A DNA stretch of 38,091 nucleotides from Macrostomum lignano. Its lineage: Eukaryota. A model generated the notes under the pieces. It ran no database searches. It saw nothing but the letters and a program-made list of their open reading frames with translations, and was not told the origin of the DNA. Made by a program: the position numbers and the translations under genes. The stretch spans positions 1 to 38,091 of the forward strand of contig NIVC01003674.1 of NCBI GenBank assembly GCA_002269645.1. The letters are read 5' to 3'. Shown piece by piece: positions 1 through 25,030 of the stretch. Position 1 is the first letter of the stretch. Each line of letters opens with the position of its first letter.

Positions 1-70
1 CTTGGGAACTCCAATCAAACTCACAATGGAATTTCCGCAGTGAACGACCCTGGGGAACTCCATATCTCAC

Positions 71-430
71 CTTATCAACGCCGTGTTTTTAAACAGCGCC
101 TGCAGCACTTTGAAATTGCTGATAAACTCGTGCTCCAATTTGGTATTAAATTTCACCTTTTTAAAGGGCAGAGTACCTGAATAATGATGAATTTGATGAT
201 GTTAGAATAAGTAAAAACAAAAACACTGCATTATTTAATAAATGAATAATGTAAAACGTACCCGGAAACAGCATGTCCATAAATTGGCAATAGACAGCCC
301 CAGAGGCTAGTTCTTCAATTTTGCCTAAATTGGCCTGCAAACAGGTATTAATCCAATCCAGGATGTCATGCCTACTCAAATTATCAGTTGTTTGCGATGT
401 CGAGTGAACGTTGACAGCTTGCTGGGCCAT
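71..430 (-). CDS. MAPRE1: EB1/RP family microtubule plus-end binding protein, first two coding exons (430-262, 176-71); gene continues off the window
   Basis: Exon 1 reads [57 protein letters not shown], closely matching the EB1 CH-domain N-terminus. Donor gtacgt at 261, acceptor ttcag at 177-181, exon 2 reads [29 protein letters not shown], donor gtgaga at 70. The conserved GVDK is one base out of frame (A5 run at 86-90). The symbol denotes the family, not a specific paralogue. Confidence 0.95.
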
Positions 431-1382
431 ACTTATTAATGAAGTTATGCTCTGCTGCTTCTGCTAGCTGAAAATAACAATTTATGCAGTTTGTGCATAC
501 TGTGGCAGTGAAACCTACAGCAGATACCACAGATACTGGAATAACTAGATGGGCTACTCAAGCACATTTGCGTGTAAGCTACTTTCAGTTCAGTAGTAGG
601 TTAGACAGATGCATTTTATGCCATGGCTCATTTATTGGCTCTTACCCACCTCCCAGCTTAAACCCTCAAACTGTGCCTTTCCCACTAACCCCCCTGCTGC
701 CCTGCCCAATTTTTATTGCCAGAGGTCTGGCCAATGTACATTACTGCTGAACCAATTAGCCAGTTGTTTATGCCTGCAAGCTTGGGGGCTTCTAAACTTA
801 TTAAAGTCATTTCAGCTGCCTTTATTTTATTATAAAATAGCTTATAAAAATTGAGCTTGCCTTTATGATTGTTAAAATTAGAGGTGCTAACAACAAACAG
901 TTTTTAATATTTTCATCATATTAATATTTAGATTAAAAAAACATAGTTGCAACTTTTAGGCAGTCTTTAAAATGAAATTTTTAATAGCATAAAATTAAGC
1001 ATAGTGATGAAATGCTATTAAATACTTAATCAGTAGTATATACTATGATCCTAAGTACACAAGAAAAATACAAGAATATAATCAATAAGAACAAGCTAAA
1101 TATAAATGCTAAATCAGGCCTAGCAACAAAAAAATAAACAAAAAACTATATAATAGGCCTATGCTATACTAGGCCTAGTTAATCATCATATTTATTATTT
1201 ATATTGTTATTAATTTCACTTTTTTATAAAAATATCAGGCAGCTTGCACTTGCAGTGCAAGAATTAGAGATCCAAATATCAATGACCTTATCCTTGGTTG
1301 GTATTGGTATTGTATACTGTTATACTAGCTTATATATATCCAGGCTAAAAAGCATAGCCTAGACCCAATGGTATTCTTGTTA

Positions 1383-2297
1383 GGCACTTTTGTTATATGA
1401 CCCCCGTGTAAAAGATACAGTCAAAGAATAGAAACCAGATGAAACATTATCCATGAGTCAAAGGCATTGCATTAAGGCAGTTTCAATTGATTTCTATTTG
1501 AAGTGAGTTCAACCAAAAAGAGTCTCTATATTCACTTTCATTATACAATCATTTAAATGGAGGAAATGTATGCAAAGGCCAAAGGGATCAGATAACAAAA
1601 CTTGGGCTTTTTTCATCAATTTCGTAATATGATCCCCCAAGTCAAAATTTTCTTTGCAAGGGATTGTATATCAAAAATGAAATCAAGGTATCGCACTTGT
1701 AGATGAAGTAAAGATAGTTCATTCATACTAGGCCTATCTAATAATTCCATGCCTGACCCCTTTCCTCACTTTCGTTTTACAATCCCCTTACAGTATGGAC
1801 AATATTGTTTCACACTATAGTGTATTGGGGATCATATAACAAAAGTGAGGGGGGTTTCAAAAAAGAAAAGGGAGGGATACCAAAAAAATCACAACTTATT
1901 TTTGTGGAATCTCATATTAGGTAGCCTAGACAAGGGGTTAAACAAGGTATATGATCCCTTTCAAACAAATTTTTGACTGGGGGATCATATTACAAAATTG
2001 ATGAAAATCCCAAGTTTCATTATCTGATCCTTTTCCATATATTTCTTCCATTTGAATGATTGTATAACGAAAGTGAATATAGATACATCCTTACTCTTGC
2101 TAAGAATCGTGGCTTGCGCTTGACTTAGCTCAGCTGCAGGGGGCATCAGGCAAATGCAACGAGGAGGCAGAGGAGACTGCCCATTCTGCTAGCCTTACGA
2201 TTAAATAGGGTAATTGCACTTCAAATATACTCCACTGATAGGCCTATGCAAATAAGACTCCTATCTTTTACATAGGGGATTGTATAACAAAAGTGCC
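1383..2297. mobile_element. Foldback / MITE-like element with nested inverted repeats
   Basis: 1383-1422 (ggcacttttgttatatgacccccgtgtaaaagatacagtc) is the reverse complement of about 2256-2297; about 1525-1650 is the reverse complement of about 1967-2085. The motif GGGGAT(C/T)(A/G)TATAACAAAAGTG recurs in both orientations. No TSD or ORF found. Confidence 0.6.
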
Positions 2298-3439
2298 ATG
2301 TTCTATAGAACAATTTCTATAGTTTACAATTCTATAAAATACAATTACCCCTTACAATTGCCCCTTACAATTTCTATAGAACTATAGAACCATAGAACCA
2401 TATGTTCTATATTGTAAGGGGATCATAAAATGACGAAAGAATGCCAACCCAACTATGTTGGCCTAGGCCTAGTCATGGTTAATTATAACTAGGCCTGGTA
2501 TATTTTTTGGGAAATTAGGCCCTATTCTCCTACTAGGCCTTACCTAACCTACTCTAGAATAAAAACCAAAGTTTGCTTTATAGGCCTATGCTAGAGTGTA
2601 TTGCTAGGCTAATATAAAACAAAACCATGTAATTTGCATTATTTGTTGTTAAAAATCAATTGACAATTAGGCTCCATGCAAGCCATAGGCCTAGTCTATG
2701 ACTCAGGTCTACAAAATTTATCTAGGTTTTCCTATGCTAGAAATTTATGCAGCACAAATGTGATATATTAACATCTCTGATTAAAAAAAACTAAATATTG
2801 AAACAACTAAGCTTATCGAATTAAAAATTTATAACTTAACCTAGCCTTACTTACTATAAAAATTTAATGTCTTCAGTTTTTATGTCATAACTGTCATAGG
2901 CCTAACATAACATGTCATAACCATAACCGAGTTAAGTTGGAAATTGGAATGGATCGTCCGCAATAGATCGTCGTTAAGTCGTCGATGACGCAGCTCGAAG
3001 AAGCGGACAAACTTTCAAATATCGATAAAAGGGTGGCCAACAGTGTATTAAAACTTTTATAGGCTTTTTTCCAACAAAAAATGAAGTGTTAAGTTTCAAG
3101 ATCAGTCTGATCGCATAGTAAAAAGTTCAAAGTTTTGTTTTAGTGTGTTTAAACCCGGAACCTGCTGCTTAATTTGTACATTTGTTTAAAGACTAAAAAA
3201 TGTTTGATAGGGGGCAAGCTATACCAAGCACTACAACCCAAAAGTGGAAAGAAAATAGACCTGGCATAGTTGCAGGCCAAAAAAGTATGGCCCAATTTTT
3301 TTGGCCGCGGCTGAGGGGGAAGGGCATATGGCTCTCCAATTGCCCCCCCCCCTGGATCCGCGCCCCTGAATTTTTGCTGGGTGTGCACAGATTAGAAATG
3401 GTTAGAGAAAATTAAACAGTCATAATTAGGGTTATTCAA

Positions 3440-3760
3440 TGCAATTAAGTTGCATCTGCTCAAACCATGCACTTGCAGGTCTGGGCTGTAGAAGTAGATC
3501 GAGAATGGTCGTCGCGAGCGGGATCGAGCTCTTGAAGCGCTCGATCCTCCTCTCCGGCCAGGAGTTCCCCACCAAACCTAGCGAGCATTGTACATGTACT
3601 TTCCGGGGCGTTGTGATGATGGAGAATGATGCCCCGAGCTCGAGTCCTTTTTTGCGACGCCTGCTGCAGGAGAGAGCGCACAGCAATTTCTGGCAGGATT
3701 AATATGTATCGCCATGCGCGCTGCTGCTCTCTCGCCGAAGATTCGATGGTGGGATCCACC
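3440..3760 (-). mobile_element. Degenerate mariner (Tc1/mariner) transposase fragment
   Basis: Minus strand gives RTRARGIILHHHNAP (mariner consensus ILHHDNA) and, in another frame at 3490-3476, YSPDL, the mariner signature motif. Frameshifted, with catalytic Asp positions altered. Confidence 0.7.
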
Positions 3761-5625
3761 AGCTGGAGAGACTAGGCTGCAACTACTTTAATTTTGTTGT
3801 TCTCTGAGTTAACTGAAGATCTAGTAAATATAAAGCTCATTACCGCTGACAATTCCCAGGCTGAGTTTGACTTGGCCACCATTGAATTTGCTGCGGGTAC
3901 CACATGTCCACGAGCCTCCTGATCCAGCTCCGGAGTCAACTGATGGGACACTCATTGCGAGCAGAAATCAATTGCTCAGGTTTAGCCTTGAGTACAGGGG
4001 TCACAGTCGCATCGCAACCTCTGTTTCTATTGGGCCACAGTGACTTCAGGCATTTTTCTTACAAAACCGCGCTATTTCATTCAACAGCGCATTTTGATGC
4101 AGACGTAAAAGCAACCCTCAGGCAGCAGTGGTGCAGTACACCATACCTAACATTTTGGGGTCTACTCTCTTTAGTAAAAGTTCATGGTTGCCAGCACACA
4201 CTAGTACGTCGCATGATACTTGCACCAGTAATAATCATGCGTTACACCGCATTCCGACACCCAGACGCGTCAGAATTAGGAGCGGCAGCACCAAGGGGCC
4301 GACCATATTATGCAGCTGCACCTGATCTACACTTGACGTAATTGCTGTAGGTACAATAAATGCAGGGTGCACAAGGTCACATGCACATGCAAACTGATAT
4401 GCGCATACATTTTGCGAGCAAAATTAATGCAACAGACTGCTATACATTCATTATATCATGTCATGTAAATATCATGTGCATGTAAAACTAAAAGTACATG
4501 TCCTGTTTTGACGCCTAAATATATCCGTCGTCTACCGGAAGAAGAAAAATTACTTGTAATTTTTACATCTAAACTGTACTATATGTCTATACAGTATATC
4601 TAATCACAACTAAGGACCACTAGAAGTTACCCTTGTATCAAGACGTAGCGTGCTTAGATGCACGCATTGCGGAATTATTTATAGCCGCTTGTTTCAATTG
4701 CAGCTGAAGTTCAATGGTACAACGGGTACCTCAAAAGGTATCATCTAGGTACTAACGAGTAGCAAAAGCTCGAAACATGCCCCTCAAATGGAATGGCGCC
4801 TAAAGCCCGCACCCCAAGAAATCAATTTCAAGCTGTGCAAGAATAGTCGAAGAAAACTGCACCGGAAAGTCAAGGCACCTGCAGGCAAACCTGTCCTGAC
4901 CTCTACGGTTGAGTAGTTTGTTTTAAAATATTCAAGCAATTTAATGTATGAGATGGTTTACGGCAAACATCAGAAAATCTCTGAGAAACTATAGACCATA
5001 TTTGCTTGAGATTTGACAATATTTGCATTTGGCGAACAATCAAGAAGCCTAAAATGATGACGGCTTGAGCTGGATTTAAGAGTTGCAGTAGGGCGCCAAC
5101 GGCAGTACTTTAAACTGCTGACTCTCCCATTCGACCTGCAGTTACCGCAGGTTTCCTGAGTTTTTCCATAGTCAGAGAAAATAAGACCGAACTCTGCTAT
5201 AACAGTATACGTCACCGCTACTCTCTATCTTCTCTGCGTCTTCTCTTCTTTCCACTTAAAAAACAGGCCTCAGTGCTCACTCCGTTTAGCTTGTCCTTTT
5301 CTTTAGCATTGGCAGATTAGAACTGATGAAGAGAGAAATTTTCTCACGTGACCATCATAGCTCTACTTTTTCAGCCTACAGCCTAGAGCTGAGCTGATGG
5401 TGCAGCGGAAAAGATTGGATAGAGAATAAAACGCAGGAGAAGCTTTCATGACGACAGACGCGGTCAGCTGCACAGCTTTAATTGCCAATCGAAAAGAGCT
5501 CACACTCCGACAACTAGTACAATTGAGGGCCAAAAAAAACTTTACAGTAACCATAGTCTACTCGTAAAACATTGACAGACAAAGCTAGACAAGTTTCCTA
5601 ATCAGGTCTAATAAGATCAAACGCA

Positions 5626-8600
5626 ATGTCGTCGCCAGTGGAGTCAGCGAAGCGCGATCTGGCTCGTGCACTTCGCTCAGAGGAGCCTCATCGAGTCAAA
5701 GCGATACTTCGGTCGCCAGTTGCCGACCTGGCTTGGCTAGACAAGCCGCTAGACAGGTAACTGCGGTTAAATGTACATACTACGCACAATCTGTAGAAAA
5801 CGTTGGGAGCACTGAATATACTGTACCAATACGTCCAGTATTTATAAGCTGCAGTACGCACCTCTAACTTTCAGTTCGTTGCAGCTTGATAGGGGCTGCA
5901 GCATTTTCTGGCAGCAGCTTGAAAACCTGCAGGGTTAAGACCATAGACTATAGCTTCTACTGCTCTAAAGCATAATCTGACTGATGTGGTTGCTATGCTA
6001 TAATGTCTGTGGCACCAAGGGGCACCAAGGGGCTTTAGCACCAAGGGGCTTTAGCACCAAGGGGCTTTAGCACCAAGGGGCTTTAGCACCAAGGGGCTTT
6101 AGCACCAAGGGGCTTTAGCACCAAGGGGCTTTAGCACCAAGGGGCTTTAGCACCAAGGGGCTTTAGCACCAAGGGGCTTTAGCACCAAGGGGCTTTAGCA
6201 CCAAGGGGCTTTAGCACCAAGGGGCTTTAGCACCAAGGGGCTTTAGCACCAAGGGGCTTTAGCACCAAGGGGCTTTAGCACCAAGGGCTTTAGCACCAAG
6301 GGGCTTTAGCACCAAGGGGCTTTAGCACCAAGGGGCTTTAGCACCAAGGGGCTTTAGCACCAAGGGGCTTTAGCACCAAGGGGCTTTAGCACCAAGGGGC
6401 TTTAGCACCAAGGGGCTTTAGCACCAAGGGGCTTTAGCACCAAGGGGCTTTAGCACCAAGGGGCTTTAGCACCAAGGGGCTTTAGCACCAAGGGGCTTTA
6501 GCACCAAGGGGCTTTAGCACCAAGGGGCTTTAGCACCAAGGGGCTTTAGCACCAAGGGGCTTTAGCACCAAGGGGCTTTAGCACCTAGGGGCTTTAGCAC
6601 CTAGGGGCTTTATCACCAATGGGCTTTAGCACCAAGGGGCTTTAGCACCTAGGGGCGCCAGCCGCTTTATTTAGTTTAATCCCTTCTTACTAAAATAGCT
6701 TGGTTCTCTTAGTTCGGAATGTACGACTAAACGGATGCATATTGCAATTTAACGTGTTCGTTCACAACAGAGACGGCAGCTGCGCTCTGCACATCGGCTC
6801 CTATTGCGGCCAGGAGGTTGGCGTTCACGCCTTGCTAGAATTCGGCTGCGACCCGAACGTCACCAATCAGAACGGAGAGACTCCGCTGCACGTGGCAGCC
6901 GAGCAGCGGTTCGAGCACATGATCGACCTGCTGGTCGATGCCGAGGCAATCCGGCTTGATGCGGCTCGAAAGCTGGACAGGCGGACTGCGCTGCACATTG
7001 CCGCCAGTCACGGCTGTTGCGACGGCGTGCGAAGACTTCTGGAAGCCGGAGCTGGCATCGATGTTCGGGATCGGGACGGCAACACACCGGTGTTCCTGGC
7101 TGTCCAGAACAACAAGTGAGGATTTAGTTTACCTGATGGGTAGCCACGCTTTGTACTTCAGTAGAAGGACGCACCAAAACAAGAGACATCTTGACAATAA
7201 TTTCCCGCAGACACCGCGTAGTTCACGAGCTGGTTTCTCGGGCGCTAATTTGAAGCTGAAGAACAACGGCTTGCAGACTTGTTTGGCATTTGCCATGAAG
7301 CAGAGCCAAGATAAAGCCATGATCAAACTGCTTGTTGAGCGCAAGTCCAACATGGCTCCTCAGCCTGGCACTAGCAGGCAGGCAGCCGCTCGAGCTACCC
7401 GAATTGACAATGCTGCACAGAAGCAACAGTCGATGGCAGGTAGAGATCTGCCTAATCAGGGTAGATTTTTTATGACCGAGTCGCATAGTAACAAACCTGA
7501 CCGGCCGAATCTCACACCCAGCAGACAGCTATGGCAGCAACACCCTCAGGTATGGCAGTTTCTAACCGATTGTATAAATCTGTTCTGTAGTAGGTTTCGA
7601 TGAGCTTAATTTATTCACTAGCTAAAGGGGGTTGTGGTAGCCCTGTGGTTTGAGCGTCGCCTGCGTCGGAGTCCCGACTTGAAAGGTTGGGGGTTCGATT
7701 CTCGACCCACTCGGAACAGTTTGTGTCCTTGAGCAAGACACTTAACTCTGCATTGCTTCAGTTTACCCAGCTGTAAAATGGGTGCCAGCATTAGCTGGGG
7801 TAATTGAGGGTGTGTGTGGCGACCCCCCCACCCCCAGTCCTTGGACTGAACGCTCAATATCTGGGGCTGAGCTGTCGGTTGCACATCTGCCCATTATTAA
7901 TATTATTATGACTATCAAATCTCATAGCCGCAGACTCGACATCAACAATCGGTCATTCCGGAAGAGCCAACAAAGCATCCTCAAGCAGCCCAGCACCCTC
8001 AGTACCACCAGCAGAAGCAGCAACAGCAGCAACAACAGCAGCACAGGCTTAGCAACGCAAATTACTCGCGCCAACGCGACACGAAAAGCGCCGGTGTTCA
8101 AGCAACCCCGGCCGAATCAGACAAAGAAGATGATGACGAAGAGGATGCATACAGCATGGACAGCAAAATCCGCGGCTTGTGCATCATCGTGAACAATCAG
8201 GATTACTTCAACTCCGACGATTTCAAAGAACGCGCCGGAACAGATCTGGACGAGAGGTGCTTGGAGCGACTATTTAAATCGTTGCGCTTTCACGTCAAGA
8301 TATTCAAGAATCTGGACGCCAAGGATATCTACTGGAACCTCAGCAACTATGCCAAGAGCGATCACAGCGGGTATGACTGTTACGTCTGCTGCATCCTGTC
8401 TCACGGCACTCTCGGCGGGATCTACGGAGTTGATGGACGAGTGCAGAAACTGTCCGACCTCACCGTGATGCTCAGCAGCACCAATTGTCCGTCGTTGGCC
8501 GGCAAGCCAAAACTGTTCTTTATCCAAGTGAGTTTCACAGCTGTACTGGTCTCGGCAATCCTCTACTTTCGCACGTTTAATTATTTTTCGAAAATAATGA

Positions 8601-9439
8601 CTTGCCCTTAATTACCGCGAGTAAATATTTGAACTCGCGCGAGTGTACGACGTGGTAGTGTATCGATTTTATGTCTATGTATACTAGTTTGAGGCGGCTA
8701 TTGGCTATGTCTATGGCCAAAACCTGAAATTGCTCTCTGTTCAAGTTTTGGCCTTAGACAATCGCTCCCTGTTTCTTGAGCAACAATGGGCCCATGCTAA
8801 GGCCCGGTTCAGGGCTATGCATGGCACATCTAAGGCCCTGTTCGACACCCACCTAGATGAGTTTCTGTGGCGCCGTTGCCACCCGCGCAACACCTTCGGC
8901 AAAATACTTTTCTGGGTGGTGCACTACTACGATGTTTAGTGCAACCGAACGTGGTAGCAAACTCGCTCATACCTGAGATGAGTCTCAAAGTCTTGAAGTT
9001 GACCGCCTGAACTTCGAAACCCATGCATCTTTAGGCTTGTCGAGGCCGCTGTCTCCAGCGAGGCGCGCACCATTTCACCGGCGGTCGGCAAGCCAGCGAT
9101 CGCGACCCGGCCATGATCCCGATGGCCAACCACGAGACGGACGCGCTGTCAGCCGACCCAGACCAAGAGTACATCCTGCCTGATCACGGCGACTTCTTGA
9201 TTGGCTACGCCACGGTGGCTCAGCACATCGCCCAGCGGCACCGGGAGCAGGGCTCCGTGTACGTGCAGACCCTCTGCGACGTTATCGAACGCGGCAGGCA
9301 CAAGGAGGACCTGCTCAGTCTGCTCACCAAAGTCAAATACCGCGTGTCGAAGCACGTGTTCCACAATGAAGACGGCAGTGTGTTCGTTCAGATGCCCGAA
9401 GTAAAGGAAACTCTGCGCAAGAAGATCTACTTTAAGTAG
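5626..9439 (+). CDS. Ankyrin-repeat prodomain caspase, about 606 aa; exons 5626-5756, 6771-7115, 7211-7549, 7928-8527, 9035-9439
   Basis: All introns are GT-AG and phase-compatible once one G is restored at 7240-7242. There are 5-6 ankyrin repeats (GETPLHVAA, RRTALHIAA, GNTPVFLAV), a Q-rich linker, a p20 region (YSMDSKIRGLCIIVNN, ERAGTDLD, CILSHG, KPKLFFIQ|ACRG) and a p10 region (GDFLIGYAT, GSVYVQTLC, QMPEVKETLRKKIYF). Confidence 0.9.
6012..6656. repeat. 16-bp minisatellite (GCACCAAGGGGCTTTA)n, about 40 copies, in caspase intron 1
   Basis: Near-perfect tandem array read directly; variants only near the 3' end and one 15-bp unit. Confidence 0.97.
7627..7908 (+). mobile_element. tRNA-derived SINE with CORE-like central domain, copy 1 (caspase intron 3)
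   Basis: Pol III A-box-like TGGTTTGAGCG (7646) and B-box GGTTCGATTC (7692). Central gtgtccttgagcaagacacttaac...cagttt...ctgtaaaatggg resembles the MIR/CORE domain. ATT-rich tail. Second copy at 16243-16551. Confidence 0.8.
8730..8939 (+). mobile_element. Merlin/ISXO2-like (IS1595 family) transposase C-terminal fragment in caspase intron 4
   Basis: Translation LEQQWAHAKARFRAMHGTSKALFDTHLDEFLWRR...FGKILFWVVHYY fits the Merlin C-terminal pattern (E..W...K......G.......L.EF.WR). No TIR or TSD found. Confidence 0.6.
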
Positions 9440-9989
9440 CAACTAAAGCACTTCATTTAAAATCTGCTCAACAATTAATAGTCTAGTATACCTTTCAAAA
9501 TTTCCCAATAATAGCATAGCAAAAGCCTAAACAATTCTTGACAATGAAAGCTATCCTAGAAACAAAAATTGCCCCGTTAAACTTCTGCAACATTTACGGA
9601 CCCTTTTGAGGGTGATATCCATGTACAATACAAGCTACTTACAATCAGCTATGTGGAGCAATAATGAGTAGAAATCGCTATTACATAACGGCTATATGTA
9701 CATGTATTATATGCATGTATAGACAAAGCTAGCTAAACTGTCTCAGTTCATGTACTTTTAAAGGACTTATCTAATTCGGTAATGTCAGACTATAAGGGTG
9801 TAAAATAAAAACGCACTTCTATCCCAATTTTTATATATTATTCTTCGACTTTTTAGAGGTTCTCAATAAAAATCCTATGTCTCGGTTGCAGAGAGCATCC
9901 ATAAGTATTTATTAAAGTAGAATATTGTTTCATCTGGCTGCTATGCCGTTGCGTCATTACCAATTTGCTCAGTTTCAGTCACATGTATA

Positions 9990-10541
9990 CAACAACAACA
10001 ACAACAACAAGGTACTGCTCCCGCCGGCCACGCAGTAGCCAGAAAGGGGGGAGCAGTCAGAAAGCGCGTCTCTGGGCCATTGCCCTCAGGAAGTCGCATC
10101 CCCCTGCTTGGTCCGGGCGCCAGCGTCACTCAGAAGTCGGTCAGGGTATCGCACCGTTCGCCCTTGGCCTCGCCTCCGCGGTCCCTGCAGCTTGAGCAGC
10201 AGCACGTCGTGTAGCGGCTCAGGACAGCGGGCCTCCGACCGGATGACGTGGCCAGCCAGTCGAAGTCGCCGCCGCGCAGCAGGTCAGAAGGCCGCGTCAG
10301 GCGCGCCCTAGTGTAGAGCGCGGCGTTGGTCTCGCTGCCTGGGCCGCTGCGCACTCCGAAAGCCGCACGCAGCATTGCCGCATGCGCAGCGTCCAGCTGC
10401 CTCTCCAAGGCGTCCGTCAGGGTCCAAGTCTCGGCGTTGTACAACAGGACAGTCTCGACGACTGCCTGAAACAGCCGAGCCTTGAGACCGTCGTCCAGGG
10501 CCTCAGATTGGAGCACGGAGCGCACAGGTCGAAATGCGGCC
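9990..10541 (-). mobile_element. 5'-truncated RTE-type non-LTR retrotransposon with (GTT)n tail and 14-bp TSD
   Basis: Minus translation KARLFQAVVETVLLYNAETWTL...LDAAHAAMLRAAFG, then frameshifted RLRLAGHV, is typical of the post-RT C-terminus of RTE-clade LINEs. Tail (AAC)n on + at 9990-10010. Identical CAGTCACATGTATA at 9976-9989 and 10542-10555. Confidence 0.88.
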
Positions 10542-10608
10542 CAGTCACATGTATATAAATTTCTTATCATAGCTATTAATATTTATAGAATAGTACATAC
10601 ATTTCTGG

Positions 10609-10805
10609 CCCCATCAGTGACATCTGCGTCAATGAGCCTGACAGTCTTCCTGACCCCATCAGTGACATCTGCATCAATGAGCCTGACAGTCTTCCTGACC
10701 CCATCAGTGACATCTGCGTCAATGAGCCTACAGTCTTCCTGACCCCATCAGTGACATCTGCGTCAATGAGCCTGACAGTCTTCCTGACCCCATCAGTGAC
10801 ATCTG
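10609..10805. repeat. 45-bp tandem repeat, about 4.4 copies
   Basis: Unit ccccatcagtgacatctgcgtcaatgagcctgacagtcttcctga read directly. Confidence 0.95.
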
Positions 10806-10980
10806 AGCAAAAGTCAATTTCGGTTTAATTGTCAAATACTATCGCAGAGCTGCATTTCTGCACAAATTTCAATGTACATCTTAGCCACATAACACAGACA
10901 CTCCCTCTACGAAACAAAGGCTTATCACATAGGCATAAGCTTTAACACAGAAGCCCCCTTTTCATTAGCTAGATGATCTC

Positions 10981-10982
10981 TC

Positions 10983-11054
<72 letters not shown>

Positions 11055-11520
11055 TCTCTCCAACACAGACTCTTTCTGTCTTCAACACAGACTCTCTCTC
11101 TCTCCCTCTCTCTCTCTACCACTCTCTCTCTTCAACACAGACTCTCTCTCTCTCTCCCTCTCTCTCTACCACTCTCTCTCTTCAACACAGACTCTCTCTG
11201 TCTTCAACACAGACTCTCTCTCTCTCTCTCTCCCTCTCTCTCTCTACCTCTCTCTCTCTCTCTCTCTTCAACACAGACTCTCTCGGTCTTCAACACAGAC
11301 TCTCTCTCTCTCTCCCTCTCTCTCTCTACCTCTCTCTCTCTCTTCAACAAAGACTCTCTCTGTCTCCAACACAGACTCTCTCGGTCTTCAACACAGACTC
11401 TCTCTCTCTCTTCAACACAGACTCTCTCTCTCTCTTCAACACAGACTCTCTCTGTCTTCAACACAGACTCTCTCCGTCTTCAACACAGGCTCTCTCCGTC
11501 TTCAACACAGACTCTCTCGT
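10981..11520. repeat. (CT)n microsatellite grading into a compound TCTTCAACACAGAC(TC)n repeat
   Basis: Read directly; it explains ORFs 10973-11584, 10925-11122 and 11204-11464. Confidence 0.97.
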
Positions 11521-11842
11521 CAACACAGGAAACGTATTTCAACATGTGTCAACGACCGTAAAAATCAAAATGAGATTGGAATGAAAAACTCAAGCTAATT
11601 AACAGATATTTTCTGTATGCTTGGAACAATAAGTTGCTGGTAGAAACTAACGTACGGGAATGAGATTTAAATTGTTTAGCTGTATTTGCCTTTTAGTATC
11701 TTTTTAATAAAAACCAAAGATAACCCAATCGATATTGAATAACTGATCGACAACTGAGGATAATTTAGACAACAAACAGGGGATTGAATTTAGTTAGTTA
11801 TATAAGTTGTTGATCGGCTTCAAGCCACACTGATGCATTCGC

Positions 11843-12190
11843 TCAATCGTGCATCGGAAACGTGAACTGGAAGTTCTTGCAGATGCAATGGCAAACACTT
11901 CGCTTAGGCGGCCCGGCCATGGCGCAGGTCGGCACCCTGTAGCAGGAGAGCCGGCATACATTCTGCCAGTAGAGCTGCGTGTTAACTGCAAGGTGAGGCG
12001 AAATCAGATTTATTGAAAGCTACTGTATAACAAAATATCGAATCGGCAATGTCTTACTCCAGTTGATCGGCCAACGCTTTTTCATCGACAGCTGCGGCAC
12101 GTCGTTCTTGCCTTTGGCGCTGTCCGCACCAGTCAGCAGACAAGCCAGCATGGCCATGGCAGCCAGGCAATAGACAGTAGCAGCCTGCAT
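11843..12190 (-). CDS. Secreted cysteine-rich prepropeptide, 91 aa; exons 12190-12058 and 11985-11843
   Basis: Spliced product MQAATVYCLAAMAMLACLLTGADSAKGKNDVPQLSMKKR-WPINWINTQLYWQNVCRLSCYRVPTCAMAGPPKRSVCHCICKNFQFTFPMHD*. The 72-nt intron has donor gtaaga (12057) and acceptor ccttgcag (11986), phase 1. It has a hydrophobic signal peptide, a KKR site and 6 Cys, with TATA and CCAAT boxes upstream. Confidence 0.8.
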
Positions 12191-12279
12191 GATTGCGTTG
12201 CTAGAAATTTGGTCAGCGAGTTTTCTACAAAACTGACAAGTCTGGGGCTGAATAAAACTGTCCCCTGGCTTAAGATGTC

Positions 12280-12315
12280 TTTTATAGACGATGGTCGGGA
12301 TTTTCACCAGCCAAT
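12280..12315 (-). promoter_or_regulatory. TATA box (TATAAAA, 12286-12280) and CCAAT box (12311-12315) of the peptide gene
   Basis: Motifs seen directly, about 90 and 120 nt upstream of the ATG at 12190, with canonical spacing. Confidence 0.55.
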
Positions 12316-12636
12316 CAGAAATTGTCAATGAATTCATCAACGCTTGAAACGTTCAAAGGTTATAAGAGATTAAGGCAAGATGGGAGAAACTCTAAATAAA
12401 AAACCAAGAAATTTCGGGAAATCCTGAAGAACCTGAGTGATCGGGTGGGGTGTTTCATAGATGTTACAATTAGTGACCAGTGATAGTGACAAGCGATAAT
12501 TTATGAGGTTACAAGTGCTGCAGAGTTTCGTTTCACAGAATGATTTGCAAATCTAGCGACAAGGTACAAGCTCTCTGAGTAGTGACTCAAAATATGTCTA
12601 TGGCCAAATCAACGGGTGCCTCGCTCGAACCCCCCA

Positions 12637-13075
12637 TCTCGAAAGCTTGCTTAAGATCTATGGTAAGATCTGTCTTACGCAGTCGTCCCGTGTATAGCAT
12701 AAGATTAATCGAAGGGCGTTTCTGAAAGTCATCTTTGTCGCAGCTTTTGTGATTGACAGGTGCTTCTGAATTCCTTGCAGAAGTTGCTCCTTCTTAAGGG
12801 TGAAGAAATTCCGCACACGCTTGACCATTCTTAGTAAATCCGTGTGTAAAAATGTAACAAGTCCGTACCAAGGCGCAAGTTTACGATCTCACATAAAAAG
12901 AGCCAGAAACATACGAAGCTATAGTTTCGAGAAACAGCTTCCTCGCATAAGTTTACGCGGTCGTAGATTTGCGCCAAATCTTACGTACGGCCCAGTTGCG
13001 AGAACTTTGATCGCAACGCCTACGCATGACCGACCCAGCTTACGTCTATTGCCAGCGCGTAAGTTGCTTTCGAGA
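12637..13075. mobile_element. Possible degenerate MITE
   Basis: Only a 10-bp inverted match (TCTCGAAAGC at 12637 and its reverse complement at 13066) plus recurring cttacg/cgtaag motifs; no TSD. Confidence 0.3.
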
Positions 13076-14155
13076 AAGACCCCCAGGACCCTGAATATGC
13101 TCTGAAAAGTGCTCTATGAAACACTCTGTGAAGCACAACAAATCTCTGCACTCTGATCGGGGGTGCCATGCAGACTCCTCGCCTTTCACCAAAGCTCCGA
13201 CACTCTTGAATCAGTGTGATACCGATACCGGAATTTTCGGGAAATGAAAAACCTAATGATTATCACAGAGAAAGCGCGGCTTGCAAATTCCGGTTGACCC
13301 CCACTGAGCTCCTGGCTCTGGAAAACTTCAGAGAATGAGCTGAGACACGGCTTCAGTGTTCAGCGGTCACTGTACCAGTGGACTTCATAGTTTCAAGCTT
13401 CAACGTAGCTATACATAGATAGTCAATCCAATCTATTTATAACCATTTTTACCGAATCTTTTCTTCAATCTTCACGTCGATATCCTAGTCTTTTAGTCAG
13501 AAATAGTCGCAAGTCTGCACAAAAACACCTGTAACCAACTGCTTGATTCGTATTCCGTAGACAACGGTGCATATAACTATAGGCCCACGCATACATTTTT
13601 ATCTCAACAAAACACCTGCGAAATCCCTCCTTTACCAGCGAGCCCGCATCAATTTTTATCCAGAGAGAGAGTAATTACCGTGGGCGTCAATTTTCAGCAA
13701 TTTTCTGTTGCTTTATTTGCTTCCTCAGTGTCGGGATGTGGGTGACAGCCATTTTTTCACCTAAGCCGCCTCACAATAATGGCCACCCACGGCTTACAGT
13801 TTTTCGACGCTGAAATCAGTAGGAACAGCCTTTCTAGATTCTTAATTTCGTATGACAAGCTGCTGCTGCTGTAACTTGCTGTAAAAACTAGCACACAAAC
13901 CTTCCAGAAGCGCGCTGCAACTTAATTTTATAACCGAACTTTAATTATTCTGTCTTATACTGAATCTCAGCAACTTGCTGTCATATTGGACTTGCGGTAT
14001 CTTATCTACTGTATCATGACTGCAGCTCATATCCATACCGAACCAGTTGTGGGAGCGAATGTTCGTACATACGAGCATATAAGTACCCGAGATTTTGTAC
14101 AGCCAAAGGTATGTCTACATTCTGCAACCTGTCTCGCCGTTTGAAAAAGAAAAAA

Positions 14156-16071
14156 ATGGTGAATTTCTGCAACGCATTTCCGTTGCTTATAGCGCTGAGC
14201 TGGCATTGTCGTTCCTGTGCTCTGGGTCAGAAGCTTATCGTGGAAACGGATGACGCAATCTACCGTGGTCGGGTGCTGTCTCTAAACACCCAACAGCCTC
14301 AACAGCAAACTGTTGCCTTCCTGGGCATTCCATACGCTCAGCCGCCGATCAATGAGCTTCGATTCGCAGCCCCGTTGCCATGGAGACCATCAATTCCCGA
14401 AAGAAACTCGTCGGTCAAAGCCGAGCTAAACGCCACCAGAGCGGGACCGGCCTGCCTGCAGCGATCAGACCAGAGTGGCACCCCTAGCCGCATGTCTGAG
14501 GACTGCCTGTACCTGAATGTACACTCGCCTCCTGGAGTTCAAGGACGTCCTAAACCGGTGCTGGTCTGGCTGCACGGCGGGTTCTTTGAAACCGGTTCAG
14601 TCAGCGACCCGGACCAGACTGGCACCTGCTTCAGTTGGGATCTGGTAGCAACGTGCCAGAGCATGCTGCTAGTTGAGGCCGCCTACCGGCTGGGAGTGTT
14701 TGGCTTCCTAGCCGAGCCGGAGCCCGCCAACGGCAATGCCGGCCTGAAGGACCAGCAGATGGCGCTGGCCTGGGTTGCTAAAAACATCGTCCACTTTGGC
14801 GGTAACAATCGCTCAGTGACTCTGGCAGGCCTTGACGCTGGAGCTGCAGCCGTCGGATTTCACATGCTGAGTCCCGGCAGCAGGGACCACTTCCAGAGAG
14901 CCGTCTTCCTTGGCGGCAGCCCCCTTGCAGGCTGGGCTTTCGTTCGAGATCTTCAAGCGCTGCGCACGGCACACGAAGCCTTCTACAGTCTGACAGGCTG
15001 CACAGACCATGACGAGCTGCTGAATTGCTTGCGCGCTCTTCCAGCGGACGAATTGAACTCTCACCAATCAAAGTTTAATCAGGTATTTGATCGAGTCGAG
15101 TTTCCAGTGATTGTTGATAGCCAGTTTCTACAGTCGGATCCTGTCGAGGCTTTTGAGCGGGGCAATTTCGAGTCAAAAGCAGTCATCATTGGCGTAACCA
15201 GTTTGGAAGGAATTCAGCTAGCCTACAGAGCCCTCGGGGCGTTCAACGTCACGAACCAGTGGAATTTGACCGGCCAAGTTCACTTGGATTTGCTTGCTGA
15301 AGCCTTTCGCTACGTACCCCGTTTTCCAGAGGAGCCGGCGCCTCTGGCCAGCGAGTTTCTGCAGCTGACATTAACTTCCTATCCGGGCGAAAACTTGGGC
15401 GCTCGAAATTTCCGGCTGCTGACGAGCGCTCTATCGGAGCAGGCGGTGGTGTGCGACTCAAACCGGATGGCCGACCTTCTGCTCCAAGCTGCCAACGGGA
15501 GTTCGGACACATTTTTTTACCAACTCGACGAGCCTGATAGCAACACAGATGAGTACCTGGGCGCCGGGCATGGCAAAGACGCCGCCTACTTCACCGGCGA
15601 ACCACTGCGACGAGCTGACTATGATACAGAGCAGAAATAATTGTCTAATTCAATGATGGCCATACTGAAAACATTTCTAGACAGTGGGAACGTCACCGTG
15701 ACTGGTTGGAAGCCGACCAGTCAACAGGGACTGGAGTTTTACAGATTCAGAGCGGCAAGAAGCGCCGATTACCGCTCGGAGATGGTCAGTGGCGGATTTA
15801 AGCGACAGGACTGCCGCCTGTGGTCTGAAGTCATGCCTCGGCTGAGTGTTGCAACGCCGACTACTTCAGCTGAACCGGACGTTGACACCGAGGCAAAGTT
15901 CTGGGAGCGCTGCAACACAACGATAAACTTGGTGAGCGTCATTGTCAGGGCGTCGGCGGAGGTCTGATCCTGCTTCTGATCGTCTGCGTTGTCATTGTGG
16001 CCAGAGATCGTTACAGTAGTTCGCACGATTTCATTGAGCTTCATCAGCGTGTCAAACCATTGGGAAAATAG
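14156..16071 (+). CDS. Intronless cholinesterase-like (type-B carboxylesterase fold) single-pass membrane protein, predicted non-catalytic; as written it is interrupted by TAA at 15638-15640 and a frameshift near 15948
   Basis: Signal peptide MVNFCNAFPLLIALSWHCRSCALG. Family motifs FLGIPYAQPPINELRFAAP, SEDCLYLNV, VWLHGG, YRLGVFGFL, GNAGLKDQQMALAWVAKNIVHFGG. The nucleophile elbow is GLDAG instead of GESAG. Homology continues past the TAA (LSNSMMAILKTF). In the shifted frame from 15949 there is a TM helix GVGGGLILLLIVCVVIVA and a short tail ending at TAG 16069-16071. Confidence 0.85.
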
Positions 16072-17337: not shown

Positions 17338-18752
17338 AGAGTCCCTTGTCTGAGAGTTCCGCATCTGAGTGTCCTGTGTCTCAGAGTCCCGTGTCTGATA
17401 GTCCCGTGTCTGAAATGACTTATGTCTGATAGTCCCGTGTCAGAAATGACTTATGTCTGATAGTCCCGTGAATGAAATGACTTATGTCTGATAGTCCCGT
17501 GAATGAAATGACTTATGTCTGAGAGTCCCGTGTCTGAAATGTCTTACATGTATGTCTGAGAGTCCCTTGTCTGAAATGTCTTACATGTATGTCTGATAGT
17601 ACCGTGTCTGAAATGTCTTACATGTATGTCTGATAGTACCGTGTCTGAAATGTCTTACATGTATGTCTGAGAGTCCCGTGTCTGAAATGTCTTACATGTA
17701 TGTCTGATAGTACCGTGTCTGAAATGTCTTACATGTATGTCTGAGAGTCCCGTGTCTGAAATGTCTTACATGTATGTCTGATAGTACCGTGTCTGAAATG
17801 TCTTACATGTATGTCTGATAGTACCGTGTCTGAAATGTCTTACATGTATGTCTGAGAGTCCCGTGTCTGAAATGTCTTACATGTATGTCTGATAGTACCG
17901 TGTCTGAAATGTCTTACATGTATGTCTGATAGTACCGTGTCTGAAATGTCTTACATGTATGTCTGATAGTACCGTGTCTGAAATGTCTTACATGTATGTC
18001 TGAGAGTCCCGTGTCTGAAATGTCTTACATGTATGTCTGATAGTACCGTGTCTGAAATGTCTTACATGTATGTCTGATAGTACCGTGTCTGAAATGTCTT
18101 ACATGTATGTCTGATAGTACCGTGTCTGAAATGTCTTACATGTATGTCTGATAGTACCGTGTCTGAAATGTCTTACATGTATGTCTGAGAGTCCGTGTCT
18201 GAAATGTCTTACATGTATGTCTGATAGTACCGTGTCTGAAATGTCTTACATGTATGTCTGAGAGTCCCGTGTCTGAAATGTCTTACATGTATGTCTGATA
18301 GTACCGTGTCTGAAATGTCTTACATGTATGTCTGAGAGTCCCGTGTCTGAAATGTCTTACATGTATGTCTGATAGTCCGTGTCTGAAATGTCTTACATGT
18401 ATGTCTGATAGTACCGTGTCTGAAATGTCTTACATGTATGTCTGATAGTACCGTGTCTGAAATGTCTTACATGTATGTCTGATAGTACCGTGTCTGAAAT
18501 GTCTTACATGTATGTCTGAGAGTCCCGTGTCTGAAATGTCTTACATGTATGTCTGATAGTACCGTGTCTGAAATGTCTTACATGTATGTCTGATAGTACC
18601 GTGTCTGAAATGTCTTACATGTATGTCTGAGAGTCCCGTGTCTGAAATGTCTTACATGTATGTCTGAGAGTCCCGTGTCTGAAATGTCTTACATGTATGT
18701 CTGATAGTCCGTGTCTGTGTCTGTATGTCTGAGAGTCAGGGTCCCGTGTCTG
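17338..18752. repeat. Minisatellite array, main unit 37 bp (TCTGAAATGTCTTACATGTATGTCTGATAGTACCGTG), about 32 copies, preceded by 31-bp and about 16-bp precursor units
   Basis: Read directly; two unit variants (gatagtacc and gagagtccc) are interspersed. Confidence 0.97.
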
Positions 18753-23344: not shown

Positions 23345-25030
23345 AAGCTTATCAAGCGCAGTAATCCTTTGTTTGCCAAGCGCAGTAATCATTGGTTTAT
23401 CAAGTGCAGTAATCCTTGGCTTATCAAGTGAAGTAAGTTCTGGTCTATCAAGTGCAGTAATCCTTGGTTTATCAAGTGCAGTAAGTCTTGGTTTATCAAG
23501 TGCAGTAAGTCTTGGTTTATCAAGTGCAGAAATCCTTGGTTTATCAAGTGCAGAAATCCTTGGTTTATAAAGTGCCGTAAGTCTTGGTTTATCCAATGCA
23601 GTAGTCCTTGGTTTATCAAGTGCAATAATCCTTGGTTAATCAAGTGCAGTAATCCTTGGTTTATGAAGTGCAGTAATCCTTGGTTTATCAAGTGCAGTAA
23701 TCCTTGGTTTATCAAGTGCAGAAATCCTTGGCTTATCAAGTGCAGTAATCCTTGGTTTATCAAGTGCAGTAACCCTTTGTTTATCAAGCGCAGTAGTCCT
23801 TGGTTTATCAAGTGCAGTAATCCTTGGCTTATCGAGTGCAATAATCCTTGGCTTATCAAGTGCAATAATCCTTGGTTTATCAAGTGCAATAATCCTTGGT
23901 TTATCAAGCGCAGTAATCTTTGGCTTATCAAGTGCAATAATCCTTGGTTTATCAAGTGCAGTAATCCTTCGCCTATCAAGTGCAATAATCCTTGGTTTAT
24001 CAAGCGCAGTAATCCTTGGCTTATCGAGTGCAATAATCCTTGGCTTAGCAAGTGCAATAATCCTTGGTTTATCGAGTGCAGTAATCCTTGGCTTATCAAG
24101 TGCAGTAATCCTTGGTTTATCAAGTGCAGTAATCCTTGGTTTATCAAGTGCAGTAAGTCTTGGTTAATCTAGTGCAGTAATCCTTGGTTTATCAAGTGCA
24201 GTAACCCTTTGTTTATCAAGCGCAGTAGTCCTTGGTTTATCAAGTGCAGTAATCCTTGGCTTATCGAGTGCAATAATCCTTGGCTTATCAAGTGCAATAA
24301 TCCTTGGTTTATCAAGTGCAATAATCCTTGGTTTATCAAGCGCAGTAATCTTTCGCTTATCGAGTGCAATAATCCTTGGCTTATCAAGTGCAATAATCCT
24401 TGGTTTATCAAGTGCAATAATCCTTGGTTTATCAAGCGCAGTAATCTTTGGCTTATCAAGTGCAATAATCCTTGGTTTATCAAGTGCAGTAATCCTTGGC
24501 CTATCAAGTGCAATAATCCTTGGTTTATCAAGCGCAGTAATCCTTGGCTTATCGAGTGCAATAATCCTTGGCTTAGCAAGTGCAATAATCCTTGGTTTAT
24601 CAAGTGCAGTAATCCTTGGCCTATCAAGTGCAATAATCCTTGGCTTAGCAAGTGCAATAATCCTTGGTTTATCAAGTGCAGTAATCCTTGGCCTATCAAG
24701 TGCAATAATCCTTGGTTTATCAAGCGCAGTAATCCTTGGCTTATCGAGTGCAGTAATCCTTGGCCTATCAAGTGCAATAATCCTTGGTTTATCAAGCGCA
24801 GTAATCCTTGGTTTATCAAGTACAATAATCCTTGGCTTATCAAGTGCAATAATCCTTGGTTTATCAAGTACAATAATCCTTGGTTTATCAAGCGCAGTAA
24901 TCCTTGGCTTATCGAGTGCAATAATCCTTGGCTTATCGAGTGCAATAATCCTTGGCTTATCCAGTGCAATAATCCTTGGCTTATCCAGTGCAATAATCCT
25001 TGGTTTATCAAGTACAATAATCCTTGGCTT
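23345..25030. repeat. 24-bp minisatellite (TTTATCAAGTGCAGTAATCCTTGG)n, about 70 copies
   Basis: Read directly; it produces the LINQGLLH and IKCSNPWF pseudo-ORFs. Confidence 0.97.

What the first reader, a model, noticed from the sequence alone, without database searches (positions are those of the whole stretch)
5626..9439. Caspase with an ankyrin-repeat prodomain instead of CARD/DED
Seen: five phase-compatible exons join 5-6 ankyrin repeats, a Q-rich linker and a complete caspase p20/p10. The catalytic His (LSHG) and Cys (QACRG) are present, as are the Asp-pocket residues (R in ERAGT, Q of QACRG, R in IAQRH). The ORF track shows it only as disconnected pieces. Established: animal initiator caspases normally use death-fold prodomains (CARD, DED), and ankyrin arrays are protein-recognition scaffolds. 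Inference: a sensor-protease activated by direct target binding rather than by an apoptosome or DISC, i.e. a candidate non-canonical death or immune pathway. I cannot verify how rare this architecture is.
Basis: partly seen in the sequence, partly recalled or inferred. Interest (0 to 1): 0.88.

Follow-up and report, generated by a model that had tools for sequence, protein, structure and literature searches.

The report
Flatworm caspase with ankyrin-repeat prodomain
This is one copy of a gene from the free-living flatworm Macrostomum lignano that joins five ankyrin repeats to a caspase-8-like protease; this "ANK caspase" type is already described in flatworms, but was reported only from parasitic species.

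Summary
The feature is real. Window 5626-9439 (+) holds a five-exon GT-AG gene. It encodes an N-terminal cap plus five ankyrin repeats, a disordered Q/P-rich linker of about 135 aa, and a complete caspase-8-like catalytic domain.

The window is a whole 38,091-bp contig of the Macrostomum lignano Mlig_3_7 assembly. The gene is copy g4 of Mlig019067. Copies g1-g3 are annotated from RNA-seq as 599-aa ANK+caspase proteins.

Read literally, the window's frame breaks in exon 3. A G-run is GGG at 7240-7242 but GGGG in a copy that is otherwise identical in the CDS, and this gives a stop at 7251-7253. That copy differs from the window over 13.9 kb almost only by homopolymer indels. I therefore read the frameshift as most likely an assembly error.

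The architecture is not new. "ANK caspases" are a published platyhelminth clade (Lee 2014; Horkan 2024), though their function is uncharacterised. What is new is that they were reported as restricted to parasitic flatworms. This free-living, early-branching species has a likely orthologue. The evidence is a collinear prodomain, one shared intron position and phase, and a sister position in a tree (65% bootstrap). The sensor-protease mechanism remains untested.

Interest is moderate: a new member of a known kind.

The parts
5626..5756 (+). Exon 1: start codon and the N-terminal helical cap of the ankyrin solenoid (aa 1-43, plus 2 nt of codon 44).
   Evidence: GT donor at 5757. Identical in copies g2/g3/g1 apart from one synonymous site. 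AF2 helices 4-17 and 21-29. Aligns with the RRELLLALES cap of cestode ANK caspases.
5757..6770 (+). Intron 1 (phase 2). It contains a 16-bp minisatellite at 6022-6656.
   Evidence: Array length differs between paralogous loci.
6771..7115 (+). Exon 2: ANK1 (6772-6870), ANK2 (6871-6978), ANK3 (6979-7074) and the first half of ANK4 (7075-7115).
   Evidence: Pfam Ank_2/Ank, AF2 helix pairs, coordinates.
7116..7210 (+). Intron 2 (95 nt, phase 2), inside ANK4. Same position and phase as intron 2 of the Echinococcus granulosus ANK caspase gene.
   Evidence: Mlig QNN[K]HRV versus Egra KTN[N]YAM, both phase 2 in the aligned column.
7211..7549 (+). Exon 3: second half of ANK4, ANK5 (7268-7354) and the start of the disordered linker.
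7240..7242 (+). G-run that is GGG here, GGGG in copy g2 and AGGG in g1/g3. This is a 1-nt deletion that shifts the frame and gives TGA at 7251-7253.
7295..7297 (+). ATG used by the GenBank model for this contig (PAA50311.1, 412 aa). That model is a truncated, prodomain-less product forced by the frameshift.
7550..7933 (+). Intron 3 (phase 0) with a tandem acceptor (AG at 7926-7927 and at 7932-7933). It carries a SINE-like insert at about 7620-7900.
   Evidence: Annotated proteins lack the 'PQ' dipeptide, so they use 7934.
7934..8527 (+). Exon 4: Q/P-rich linker (poly-Q 8009-8041), acidic patch (8120-8146), and the p20 part of the caspase domain up to FFIQ. It includes the P1-pocket Arg (in ERAGT, 8228-8242) and the catalytic His codon (8402-8404).
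   Evidence: The linker has pLDDT below 50.
8528..9034 (+). Intron 4 (phase 0). It splits the active-site pentapeptide Q|ACRG.
9035..9439 (+). Exon 5: ACRG (catalytic Cys codon 9038-9040), an Asp-rich intersubunit linker (ASDRD 9092-9106, HETD 9131-9142, LSAD 9146-9157), the p10 part with the P1-pocket Arg (in IAQRH, 9227-9241), and stop TAG at 9437-9439.
   Evidence: A 15-nt segment of the linker (within about 9084-9103; its exact ends are ambiguous because of flanking repeated bases) is deleted in the genome of copy g1.

Best explanation
Window 5626-9439 is copy g4 of the Macrostomum lignano gene Mlig019067. The gene is a member, and most likely an orthologue, of the platyhelminth 'ANK caspase' clade.

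Shown:
- The intact gene encodes about 599-606 aa. The parts are an N-cap plus five ankyrin repeats (aa 1-207), an intrinsically disordered Q/P-rich linker (aa 208 to about 340), and a caspase-8-like p20/p10 domain.
- The protease domain has the His/Cys dyad, the Arg-Gln-Arg Asp pocket, and an Asp-rich intersubunit loop that includes HETD|A.
- The window's 1-nt frameshift is a homopolymer-length difference. It occurs in a contig that duplicates the end of another contig.

Inferred:
- The frameshift is most likely an assembly error and not a dead gene.
- The protein is an initiator-type zymogen. In it the ankyrin solenoid replaces the tandem DEDs as the module that brings protease domains together on a partner or platform that is still unknown. 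Dimerisation and cleavage at linker Asp sites then activate it upstream of executioner caspases.
- Because a free-living macrostomorph has it, the ANK-caspase fusion probably predates parasitism.
For: Identity and copies:
- The window is the 38,091-bp contig that carries PAA50311.1. Three sister loci encode 599-aa proteins that hit both Ank families and Peptidase_C14.
- Those models come from RNA-seq and transcript evidence (PMC5730564).

Frameshift:
- Window 1-13876 matches the end of NIVC01001264.1 at 99.8% identity. There are 28 differing alignment columns, about 22 of them 1-nt indels, mostly in homopolymers or simple repeats.
- With one G restored, the CDS has 0 differences in 1815 nt from g2.

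Domains and selection:
- Copies differ at dN/dS of about 0.2-0.26, while flanks and introns are only 94-95% identical.

Orthology with parasite ANK caspases:
- The best non-self hits of the catalytic domain are Schistosoma proteins.
- In an NJ tree it is sister to the Neodermata ANK clade, with 65% bootstrap.
- The prodomain aligns collinearly from cap to cap at 22-30% identity.
- One intron position and phase inside ANK4 is shared with Echinococcus.
- Motifs AQR and PEVxxTL are shared.

Literature:
- The ANK caspase clade is defined in PMC11463336.
- An ANK domain binds an active caspase in trans in Caiap (PMC5662874).
Against: - No read-level data were available, so a genuine null allele cannot be excluded for this copy.
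- Transcript continuity is taken from the public annotation and was not seen directly. That annotation carries a non-canonical 15-nt gap on g2-g4, which suggests the underlying transcript came from g1. Expression of this particular copy is therefore unproven.
- Clade support is only moderate: 65% NJ bootstrap on 242 columns, with no planarian DED caspases in the tree.
- Only one of four M. lignano introns is shared with Echinococcus.
- ANK repeats align with one another easily.
- Horkan et al. sampled M. lignano and did not report this protein.
- The activation mechanism and the ANK ligand are entirely inferred.
Confidence: 0.8

Rival explanations
1. The window copy is a true pseudogene or null allele. 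The 1-nt deletion is genomic, so this locus yields only a roughly 172-aa truncated ankyrin fragment. Alternatively, internal initiation at 7295 yields the 412-aa prodomain-less caspase annotated in GenBank.
For: The deletion is present in the deposited sequence, which was polished with Illumina data. GenBank annotates only 412 aa on this contig. M. lignano carries redundant gene copies, so loss of one would be tolerated.
Against: Apart from the missing G, the CDS is identical to g2. The 13.9-kb overlap differs almost only by homopolymer indels, which is the error signature of PacBio consensus. There are no other disabling mutations, and all splice sites are intact.
Confidence: 0.12
2. The frame is rescued in vivo by the alternative 3' splice site at 7220-7221, so that exon 3 starts at 7222. 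This gives an open 602-aa product with a damaged fourth ankyrin repeat.
For: Joining 7115 to 7222 restores an uninterrupted ORF (alt A).
Against: The AG at 7220-7221 has no pyrimidine tract before it. The resulting peptide (NSRAGFSGANL) destroys the second helix of ANK4, which is conserved in all other copies and in the parasite orthologues. No annotated product uses this site.
Confidence: 0.03
3. The ankyrin exons and the caspase exons are separate genes, for example cut apart by spliced-leader trans-splicing. On this reading the fusion is an annotation artefact.
For: M. lignano has frequent trans-splicing and polycistronic transcriptional units. A 253-aa caspase-only entry that starts at the Met at 8156 exists in older data (P0124).
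Against: The annotation pipeline cut transcriptional units at experimentally detected trans-splice sites and still kept a single 599-aa ORF at three loci. The 135-aa linker has no stop codon in any copy. The same two-domain order is found in trematode and cestode proteins.
Confidence: 0.04
4. The M. lignano ANK-caspase arose by independent domain shuffling and is convergent with the parasite ANK caspases. On this reading it says nothing about the origin of that clade.
For: Caspases with unusual N-terminal domains arise repeatedly in invertebrates. Examples are the annelid ANK caspase and the kinase-caspase, and the Patiria ANK+DD+C14 and Branchiostoma LRR+C14 proteins. Bootstrap support is only 65%. 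Triclads are reported to lack ANK caspases.
Against: The prodomains are collinear, with matching N- and C-caps and the same number of repeats. They share an identical intron position and phase in ANK4; my estimate of the chance is about 0.6% under uniform placement. Catalytic-domain motifs are shared. The nearest non-self hits are Schistosoma proteins.
Confidence: 0.2

Closest known systems
Platyhelminth ANK caspases (Schistosoma, Echinococcus, Taenia, Hymenolepis; Lee et al. 2014; Horkan et al. 2024, PMC11463336)
   Same: Same domain order: ANK prodomain, long linker, caspase-8-like p20/p10. The prodomain aligns collinearly with five repeats plus caps. They share CPSLAGKPKLFFIQACRG, AQR and PEVxxTL. 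One intron is shared. They group as sisters in the tree.
   Different: The host is a free-living macrostomorph, whereas the clade was published as parasite-only. The protein is shorter (about 600 versus 700-810 aa). It lacks the insert of about 45 aa between ANK3 and ANK4. Its linker is Q-rich. Other intron positions differ, including one that splits Q|ACRG. Catalytic-domain identity is only 36-38% and whole-protein identity 30-32%.
Caspase-8 / DED caspases (human CASP8, e.g. PDB 4ps1, 6px9)
   Same: These are the closest solved structures (E 1e-49, 37% identity, TM 0.88). They share the dyad, the P1 pocket and an (I/L/V/H)ETD-type site in the intersubunit linker.
   Different: No DEDs are detected (PF01335 absent), so FADD/DISC recruitment through DED filaments is not possible. 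UniProt's name 'Caspase-8' reflects the catalytic domain only.
[quoted passage not shown]
   Same: It is a precedent for an ANK array working with a caspase: its ANK domain binds active caspase-1-like Caspa. Caiap-family proteins appear among the ANK-region hits (P0097, P0103).
   Different: In Caiap the ANK array and the protease are separate proteins, and oligomerisation is supplied by a CARD. It has 16 repeats and is vertebrate-only. No specific homology was shown beyond the generic ANK repeat.
Other non-death-fold caspases of invertebrates (Alitta virens ANK caspase; M. lignano kinase-prodomain caspase; Patiria DAPK-like ANK+Roc+DD+C14, P0238)
   Same: They also have ANK or other interaction modules in front of a caspase domain.
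   Different: They are lineage-specific singletons with different extra domains. I did not test any relationship to the present gene.

Membership tests
Caspase (peptidase family C14A) | Peptidase_C14 domain with the caspase/hemoglobinase fold | tested here: met
   Pfam PF00656, E 1.1e-54, full-length match 1-233/233. The AF2 model matched to PDB caspase-8 at TM 0.88.
Caspase (peptidase family C14A) | Catalytic His (SHG) and Cys (QACxG) dyad | tested here: met
   LSHG at 8396-8407 and Q|ACRG at 8525-8527 plus 9035-9046. Both are invariant in the alignments with caspase-8 and flatworm homologues.
Caspase (peptidase family C14A) | P1-Asp pocket (Arg, Gln, Arg) | tested here: met
   The R of ERAGT, the Q of QACRG and the R of AQRH align with the caspase-8 R/Q/R columns.
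Caspase (peptidase family C14A) | Asp-specific endopeptidase activity | not testable with these tools
   Needs recombinant enzyme tested on IETD/DEVD-type substrates, with a Cys-to-Ala control.
Platyhelminth ANK caspase clade (Horkan et al. 2024) | Ankyrin-repeat prodomain N-terminal to p20/p10, with no CARD or DED | tested here: met
Platyhelminth ANK caspase clade (Horkan et al. 2024) | Catalytic domain falls inside or next to the monophyletic ANK clade | tested here: inconclusive
   NJ tree (Kimura distance, 242 columns, 500 bootstraps): sister to Neodermata ANK caspases at 65%. Nearest non-self hits are Schistosoma proteins. No ML or Bayesian tree was made, and no triclad DED caspases were included.
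Platyhelminth ANK caspase clade (Horkan et al. 2024) | Prodomain homologous by descent, not just 'some ANK repeats' | tested here: met
   Collinear cap-to-cap alignment at 22-30% identity. Identical intron position and phase in ANK4 compared with Echinococcus.
Platyhelminth ANK caspase clade (Horkan et al. 2024) | Reported distribution: parasitic flatworms only | tested here: not met
   The host is Macrostomum lignano, a free-living member of Macrostomorpha. This is a reported property of the clade and not a structural criterion. The result argues that the reported distribution is too narrow.
Caspase-8 / DED caspase | Tandem death effector domains for FADD binding | tested here: not met
   No PF01335 hit at E <= 0.01. 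The N-terminus folds as an ANK solenoid.
Processed or unitary pseudogene | Disabling mutation that is real in the genome, with relaxed constraint | tested here: inconclusive
   One frameshift is present. It is a homopolymer-length difference within a pattern of assembly-type errors. No other lesions are present, and the CDS is otherwise identical to an intact copy. Reads were not available.

The most novel reading that the evidence does not exclude
The ANK caspase is not an adaptation to parasitism. It would be an ancestral rhabditophoran initiator caspase, present before Macrostomorpha split from the lineage leading to planarians and parasites, and later lost in triclads. On this reading its ankyrin domain recruits it to a death or immune platform that is not yet known and does not use death-fold domains. 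M. lignano has transgenesis tools and several gene copies, and would become the first tractable model for finding that platform.
Probability: 0.5. Interest if true: 0.55.

Novelty: new member of a known kind. Interest (0 to 1): 0.4.

Why it matters
ANK caspases are the only long-prodomain caspases, other than a CARD caspase, reported in parasitic flatworms. Those species have lost FADD and DED caspases. The published explanation ties the origin of ANK caspases to parasitism (PMC11463336).

An orthologue in a free-living, early-branching flatworm would change that picture in three ways:
- It would move the origin of the fusion to the base of Rhabditophora.
- It would weaken the parasitism hypothesis.
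- It would imply that planarians lost the gene.

It would also offer a laboratory model for finding what the ankyrin domain binds, which is relevant to cell-death pathways in schistosomes and tapeworms. M. lignano has published transgenesis methods (PMC5730564).

The finding also flags an annotation problem. On this contig the gene is deposited as a truncated 412-aa product because of a probable 1-nt assembly error. UniProt names the family 'Caspase-8' although it has no DEDs.

Tried and rejected
- The alternative acceptor at 7222 as a natural rescue was rejected because it breaks a conserved ANK helix and no annotated product uses it.
- The annotated 15-nt gap in exon 5 (HHFTG|DRDP) looked like a micro-intron. 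I rejected this. The 15 nt are present in the genome in the window, g2 and g3, are deleted only in g1, and have no GT-AG ends. It is therefore most likely a g1 transcript mapped onto the other copies.
- A Biopython NJ bootstrap timed out. I replaced it with a numpy implementation.
- A look-up of the Schistosoma rodhaini gene, to compare trematode introns, found no record.
- A profile search for more ANK caspases in free-living flatworms found no further named examples. The search is limited to candidates sharing words with the query, so this is not evidence of absence.
- The supplements of Horkan et al. are not held, so I could not check which M. lignano accessions they used.
- ARAGORN and Rfam found nothing in the SINE-like intron insert.
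- Pfam found nothing in the transposon-like ORF fragments.
Full report
**What is in the sequence**

Window 5626-9439 (+) contains five exons with canonical GT-AG borders: 5626-5756, 6771-7115, 7211-7549, 7928 (or 7934)-8527 and 9035-9439. All four junctions are phase-compatible.

It runs into TGA at 7251-7253. The cause is a G-run at 7240-7242. With one G added, the product is a 606-aa protein with a textbook ankyrin helix (…HRVVHELVSRGANLKLKNNG…).

An alternative acceptor at 7222 also reopens the frame, but it destroys that helix.

**Domains**

Pfam finds Ank, Ank_2, Ank_3, Ank_4 and Ank_5 in the N-terminal third. It also finds a full-length Peptidase_C14 match at residues 354-604 (E 1e-54). 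It finds no CARD, DED or death domain.

The closest solved structures are human caspase-8 catalytic domains (E 1e-49). The P1-pocket Arg, the SHG His, the QACxG Gln/Cys and the second Arg are all aligned.

An AlphaFold2 model of the intact paralogue gives the following:
- residues 1-207: a confident ANK solenoid, made of an N-terminal helical hairpin plus five canonical helix pairs
- residues 208-340: a disordered segment (the Q/P-rich linker)
- residues 341-599: a confident caspase domain
- residues 481-510: a disordered intersubunit loop

Foldseek against the PDB ranks caspase-8 first (TM 0.88, 37% identity). The intersubunit loop is rich in Asp and contains HETD|A, which resembles the VETD|S autoprocessing site of caspase-8. 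The caspase-8 site is from my own knowledge; the window coordinates are.

**Where it comes from, and the frameshift**

The protein search shows that the window is Macrostomum lignano. The cluster look-up shows a 412-aa GenBank protein (PAA50311.1, BOX15_Mlig019067g4) on a contig of exactly 38,091 bp, which is this window. Three sister genes, g1, g2 and g3, each encode 599 aa with both ANK and caspase domains.

The 412-aa model starts at the ATG at 7295, just downstream of the frameshift.

Window 1-13876 aligns to the terminal 13.9 kb of contig NIVC01001264.1 (copy g2) at 99.8% identity. There are 28 differing alignment columns, and about 22 of them are single-base indels. Most of these lie in homopolymers or simple repeats. 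There are only about four substitutions. At the critical site the window has GGG and g2 has GGGG. Copies g1 and g3 have AGGG, which is the same length as g2.

With the G restored, the window CDS is identical to the g2 CDS over 1815 nt.

The assembly is PacBio/Canu polished with Pilon, and it is known to be highly redundant (PMC5730564). The most economical reading is that this contig is a redundant or allelic copy and that the frameshift is a homopolymer consensus error. A real null allele cannot be excluded without reads.

The deposited proteins lack 'PQ' at the exon 3/4 junction. They therefore use the second AG of a tandem acceptor, so exon 4 starts at 7934. Copy g1 has lost the first AG altogether.

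The deposited proteins also lack five residues (GRQAS) in the intersubunit loop. Those 15 nt are present in the genome in the window, g2 and g3 and are deleted only in g1. The gap has no GT-AG ends. The annotation on g2-g4 therefore probably reflects a g1-type transcript.

This means that expression of g1 is supported, while expression of the window copy is not shown directly.

The annotation pipeline was RNA-seq based, and it cut transcriptional units at experimentally detected trans-splice sites. It still kept ANK and caspase in one ORF at three loci. This argues against the idea of two separate genes.

**Constraint**

Between paralogues the CDS differs by 6-9 synonymous and 5-8 non-synonymous changes (dN/dS of about 0.2-0.26, on small counts). 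The surrounding introns and flanks are only 94-95% identical. All splice sites are conserved.

**Comparison with what is known**

The same ANK + Peptidase_C14 architecture is found in Schistosoma rodhaini, Hymenolepis diminuta, Anoplocephala perfoliata, Echinococcus granulosus and Taenia solium. Several of these are labelled 'Caspase-8'.

Horkan et al. 2024 (PMC11463336) name these proteins 'ANK caspases' and credit their first identification to Lee et al. 2014 in Schistosoma. They find the group monophyletic and sister to DED caspases. They propose an unknown ANK-dependent activation pathway. They state that ANK caspases are restricted to parasitic flatworms and absent from free-living ones.

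They sampled M. lignano but reported only a kinase-prodomain caspase, placed as sister to the ANK clade, and 'no other' unusual prodomain in platyhelminths. A full-text search for 'ANK caspase' returns only that paper.

The architecture is therefore known but functionally uncharacterised. The M. lignano member appears to have been overlooked, although it has been in GenBank since the 2017 assembly.

**Is it an orthologue of the parasite ANK caspases?**

Evidence for orthology:
- With the catalytic domain alone as query, the best non-Macrostomum hits are Schistosoma proteins, ahead of vertebrate caspase-8.
- A neighbour-joining tree (242 columns, 500 bootstraps) puts the two M. lignano sequences sister to a 100%-supported neodermatan ANK clade, with 65% support for the union.
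- The prodomains align collinearly from an N-terminal cap (KRDLARALRSEEP versus RRELLLALESMD), through five repeats, to a C-terminal cap (KAMIKLL versus KMTKLL). The parasites have an insertion between ANK3 and ANK4.
- I mapped the Echinococcus gene. Its intron 2 lies in the same aligned codon and the same phase (2) as M. lignano intron 2, inside ANK4. With two introns in each prodomain and about 630 possible position and phase slots, I estimate a chance coincidence at roughly 0.6% under uniform placement.
- The motifs AQR (around the P1 Arg) and PEV(K/R)xTL are shared by Macrostomum and the parasites but not by caspase-8.

Evidence against orthology:
- Tree support is moderate, and no planarian sequences were included.
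- The other introns are not shared. Echinococcus has none at Q|ACRG, and M. lignano has none at FQ|NRGG.
- Unusual caspase prodomains arise often in invertebrates.

I put orthology at roughly 0.75-0.8.

**How it probably works**

Shown by sequence and model: the protein has a competent caspase active site of the caspase-8 type. It has a long flexible tether and a protein-binding solenoid in the position where initiator caspases carry their recruitment domains.

Inferred:
- It is an initiator-type zymogen that is activated when ANK-mediated binding concentrates it on a partner, followed by cleavage at linker Asp residues.
- Alternatively or additionally, the ANK domain could bind the protease domain itself. 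Caiap does this in trans with a caspase-1 homologue (PMC5662874), and Horkan et al. cite designed ankyrin-repeat proteins that bind human caspases. In that case the ANK domain would act as an intramolecular inhibitor or stabiliser.

Nothing here discriminates between these possibilities.

**Verdict**

The architecture is already described in this phylum, so novelty is 'new member of a known kind'.

The added value is phylogenetic. A probable orthologue in a free-living macrostomorph (taxonomy) contradicts the published 'parasite-only' distribution, and it supplies a tractable model. Interest is about 0.4.

Noticed in passing
window 6022-6656: A 16-bp minisatellite (GCACCAAGGGGCTTTA, about 40 copies, 98% matches) lies inside intron 1 of the caspase gene. 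The array length differs between the paralogous loci; it appears considerably longer in L002 (copy g3).
   Followed up: partly
window 1-13876 versus L003 4372-18258: The first 13.9 kb of this contig duplicates the end of contig NIVC01001264.1 at 99.8% identity, differing almost only by homopolymer indels. This looks like unmerged assembly redundancy or haplotigs. Gene copies 'g2' and 'g4' may therefore be one physical gene counted twice.
   Followed up: yes
window about 9084-9103 versus L001 (copy g1): Copy g1 has a genomic in-frame 15-nt deletion in the intersubunit linker (GRQAS). The GenBank proteins of g2, g3 and g4 also lack these residues although their DNA has them. The annotation seems to have transferred a g1-type transcript with a non-canonical 15-nt gap.
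   Followed up: yes
window about 7620-7900 (intron 3): This insert begins like a tRNA-derived SINE (GGGGTTGTGGTAGCCC…GGTTCGATTCTCGACCC). ARAGORN and Rfam report nothing there.
   Followed up: partly
window 8730-8939 (intron 4) and 10130-10570 (-): Two short ORF fragments look transposon-derived. One (…FDTHLDEFLWRRCHPRNTF…) resembles a transposase C-terminus, and the other (…LLYNAETWTLT…) resembles the tail of a LINE reverse transcriptase. Both resemblances are from memory only; Pfam gave no hit.
   Followed up: partly
window 14111-15640 (+): A single 509-aa ORF matches the carboxylesterase family (PF00135, E 3e-90). It is syntenic with the COesterase gene that lies downstream of copy g1 in L001.
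   Followed up: partly
window 10600-38000: There is a very high density of long tandem arrays: a 37-mer at 17514-18717, a 24-mer at 23349-25027, a 34-mer at 29908-30908, a 17-mer at 34547-36541 and (AGAT)n at 33301-33802. These generate long spurious ORFs. The density is consistent with the reported 15% simple and tandem repeat content of this genome.
   Followed up: no
P0238 (Patiria miniata) and P0262 (Branchiostoma belcheri): A sea-star 'DAPK-1-like' protein combines ANK, Roc, a death domain and Peptidase_C14. A lancelet protein combines LRR, Roc and Peptidase_C14. Caspases with non-death-fold N-terminal modules are therefore not confined to Lophotrochozoa.
   Followed up: no
PMC11463336 versus GenBank PAA94436.1, PAA88208.1, PAA70133.1: The 2024 survey of lophotrochozoan caspases sampled M. 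lignano and states that free-living flatworms lack ANK caspases. Three full-length ANK+caspase proteins from that species have been public since the 2017 annotation. I could not check which accessions the authors used, because the supplements are not held.
   Followed up: partly
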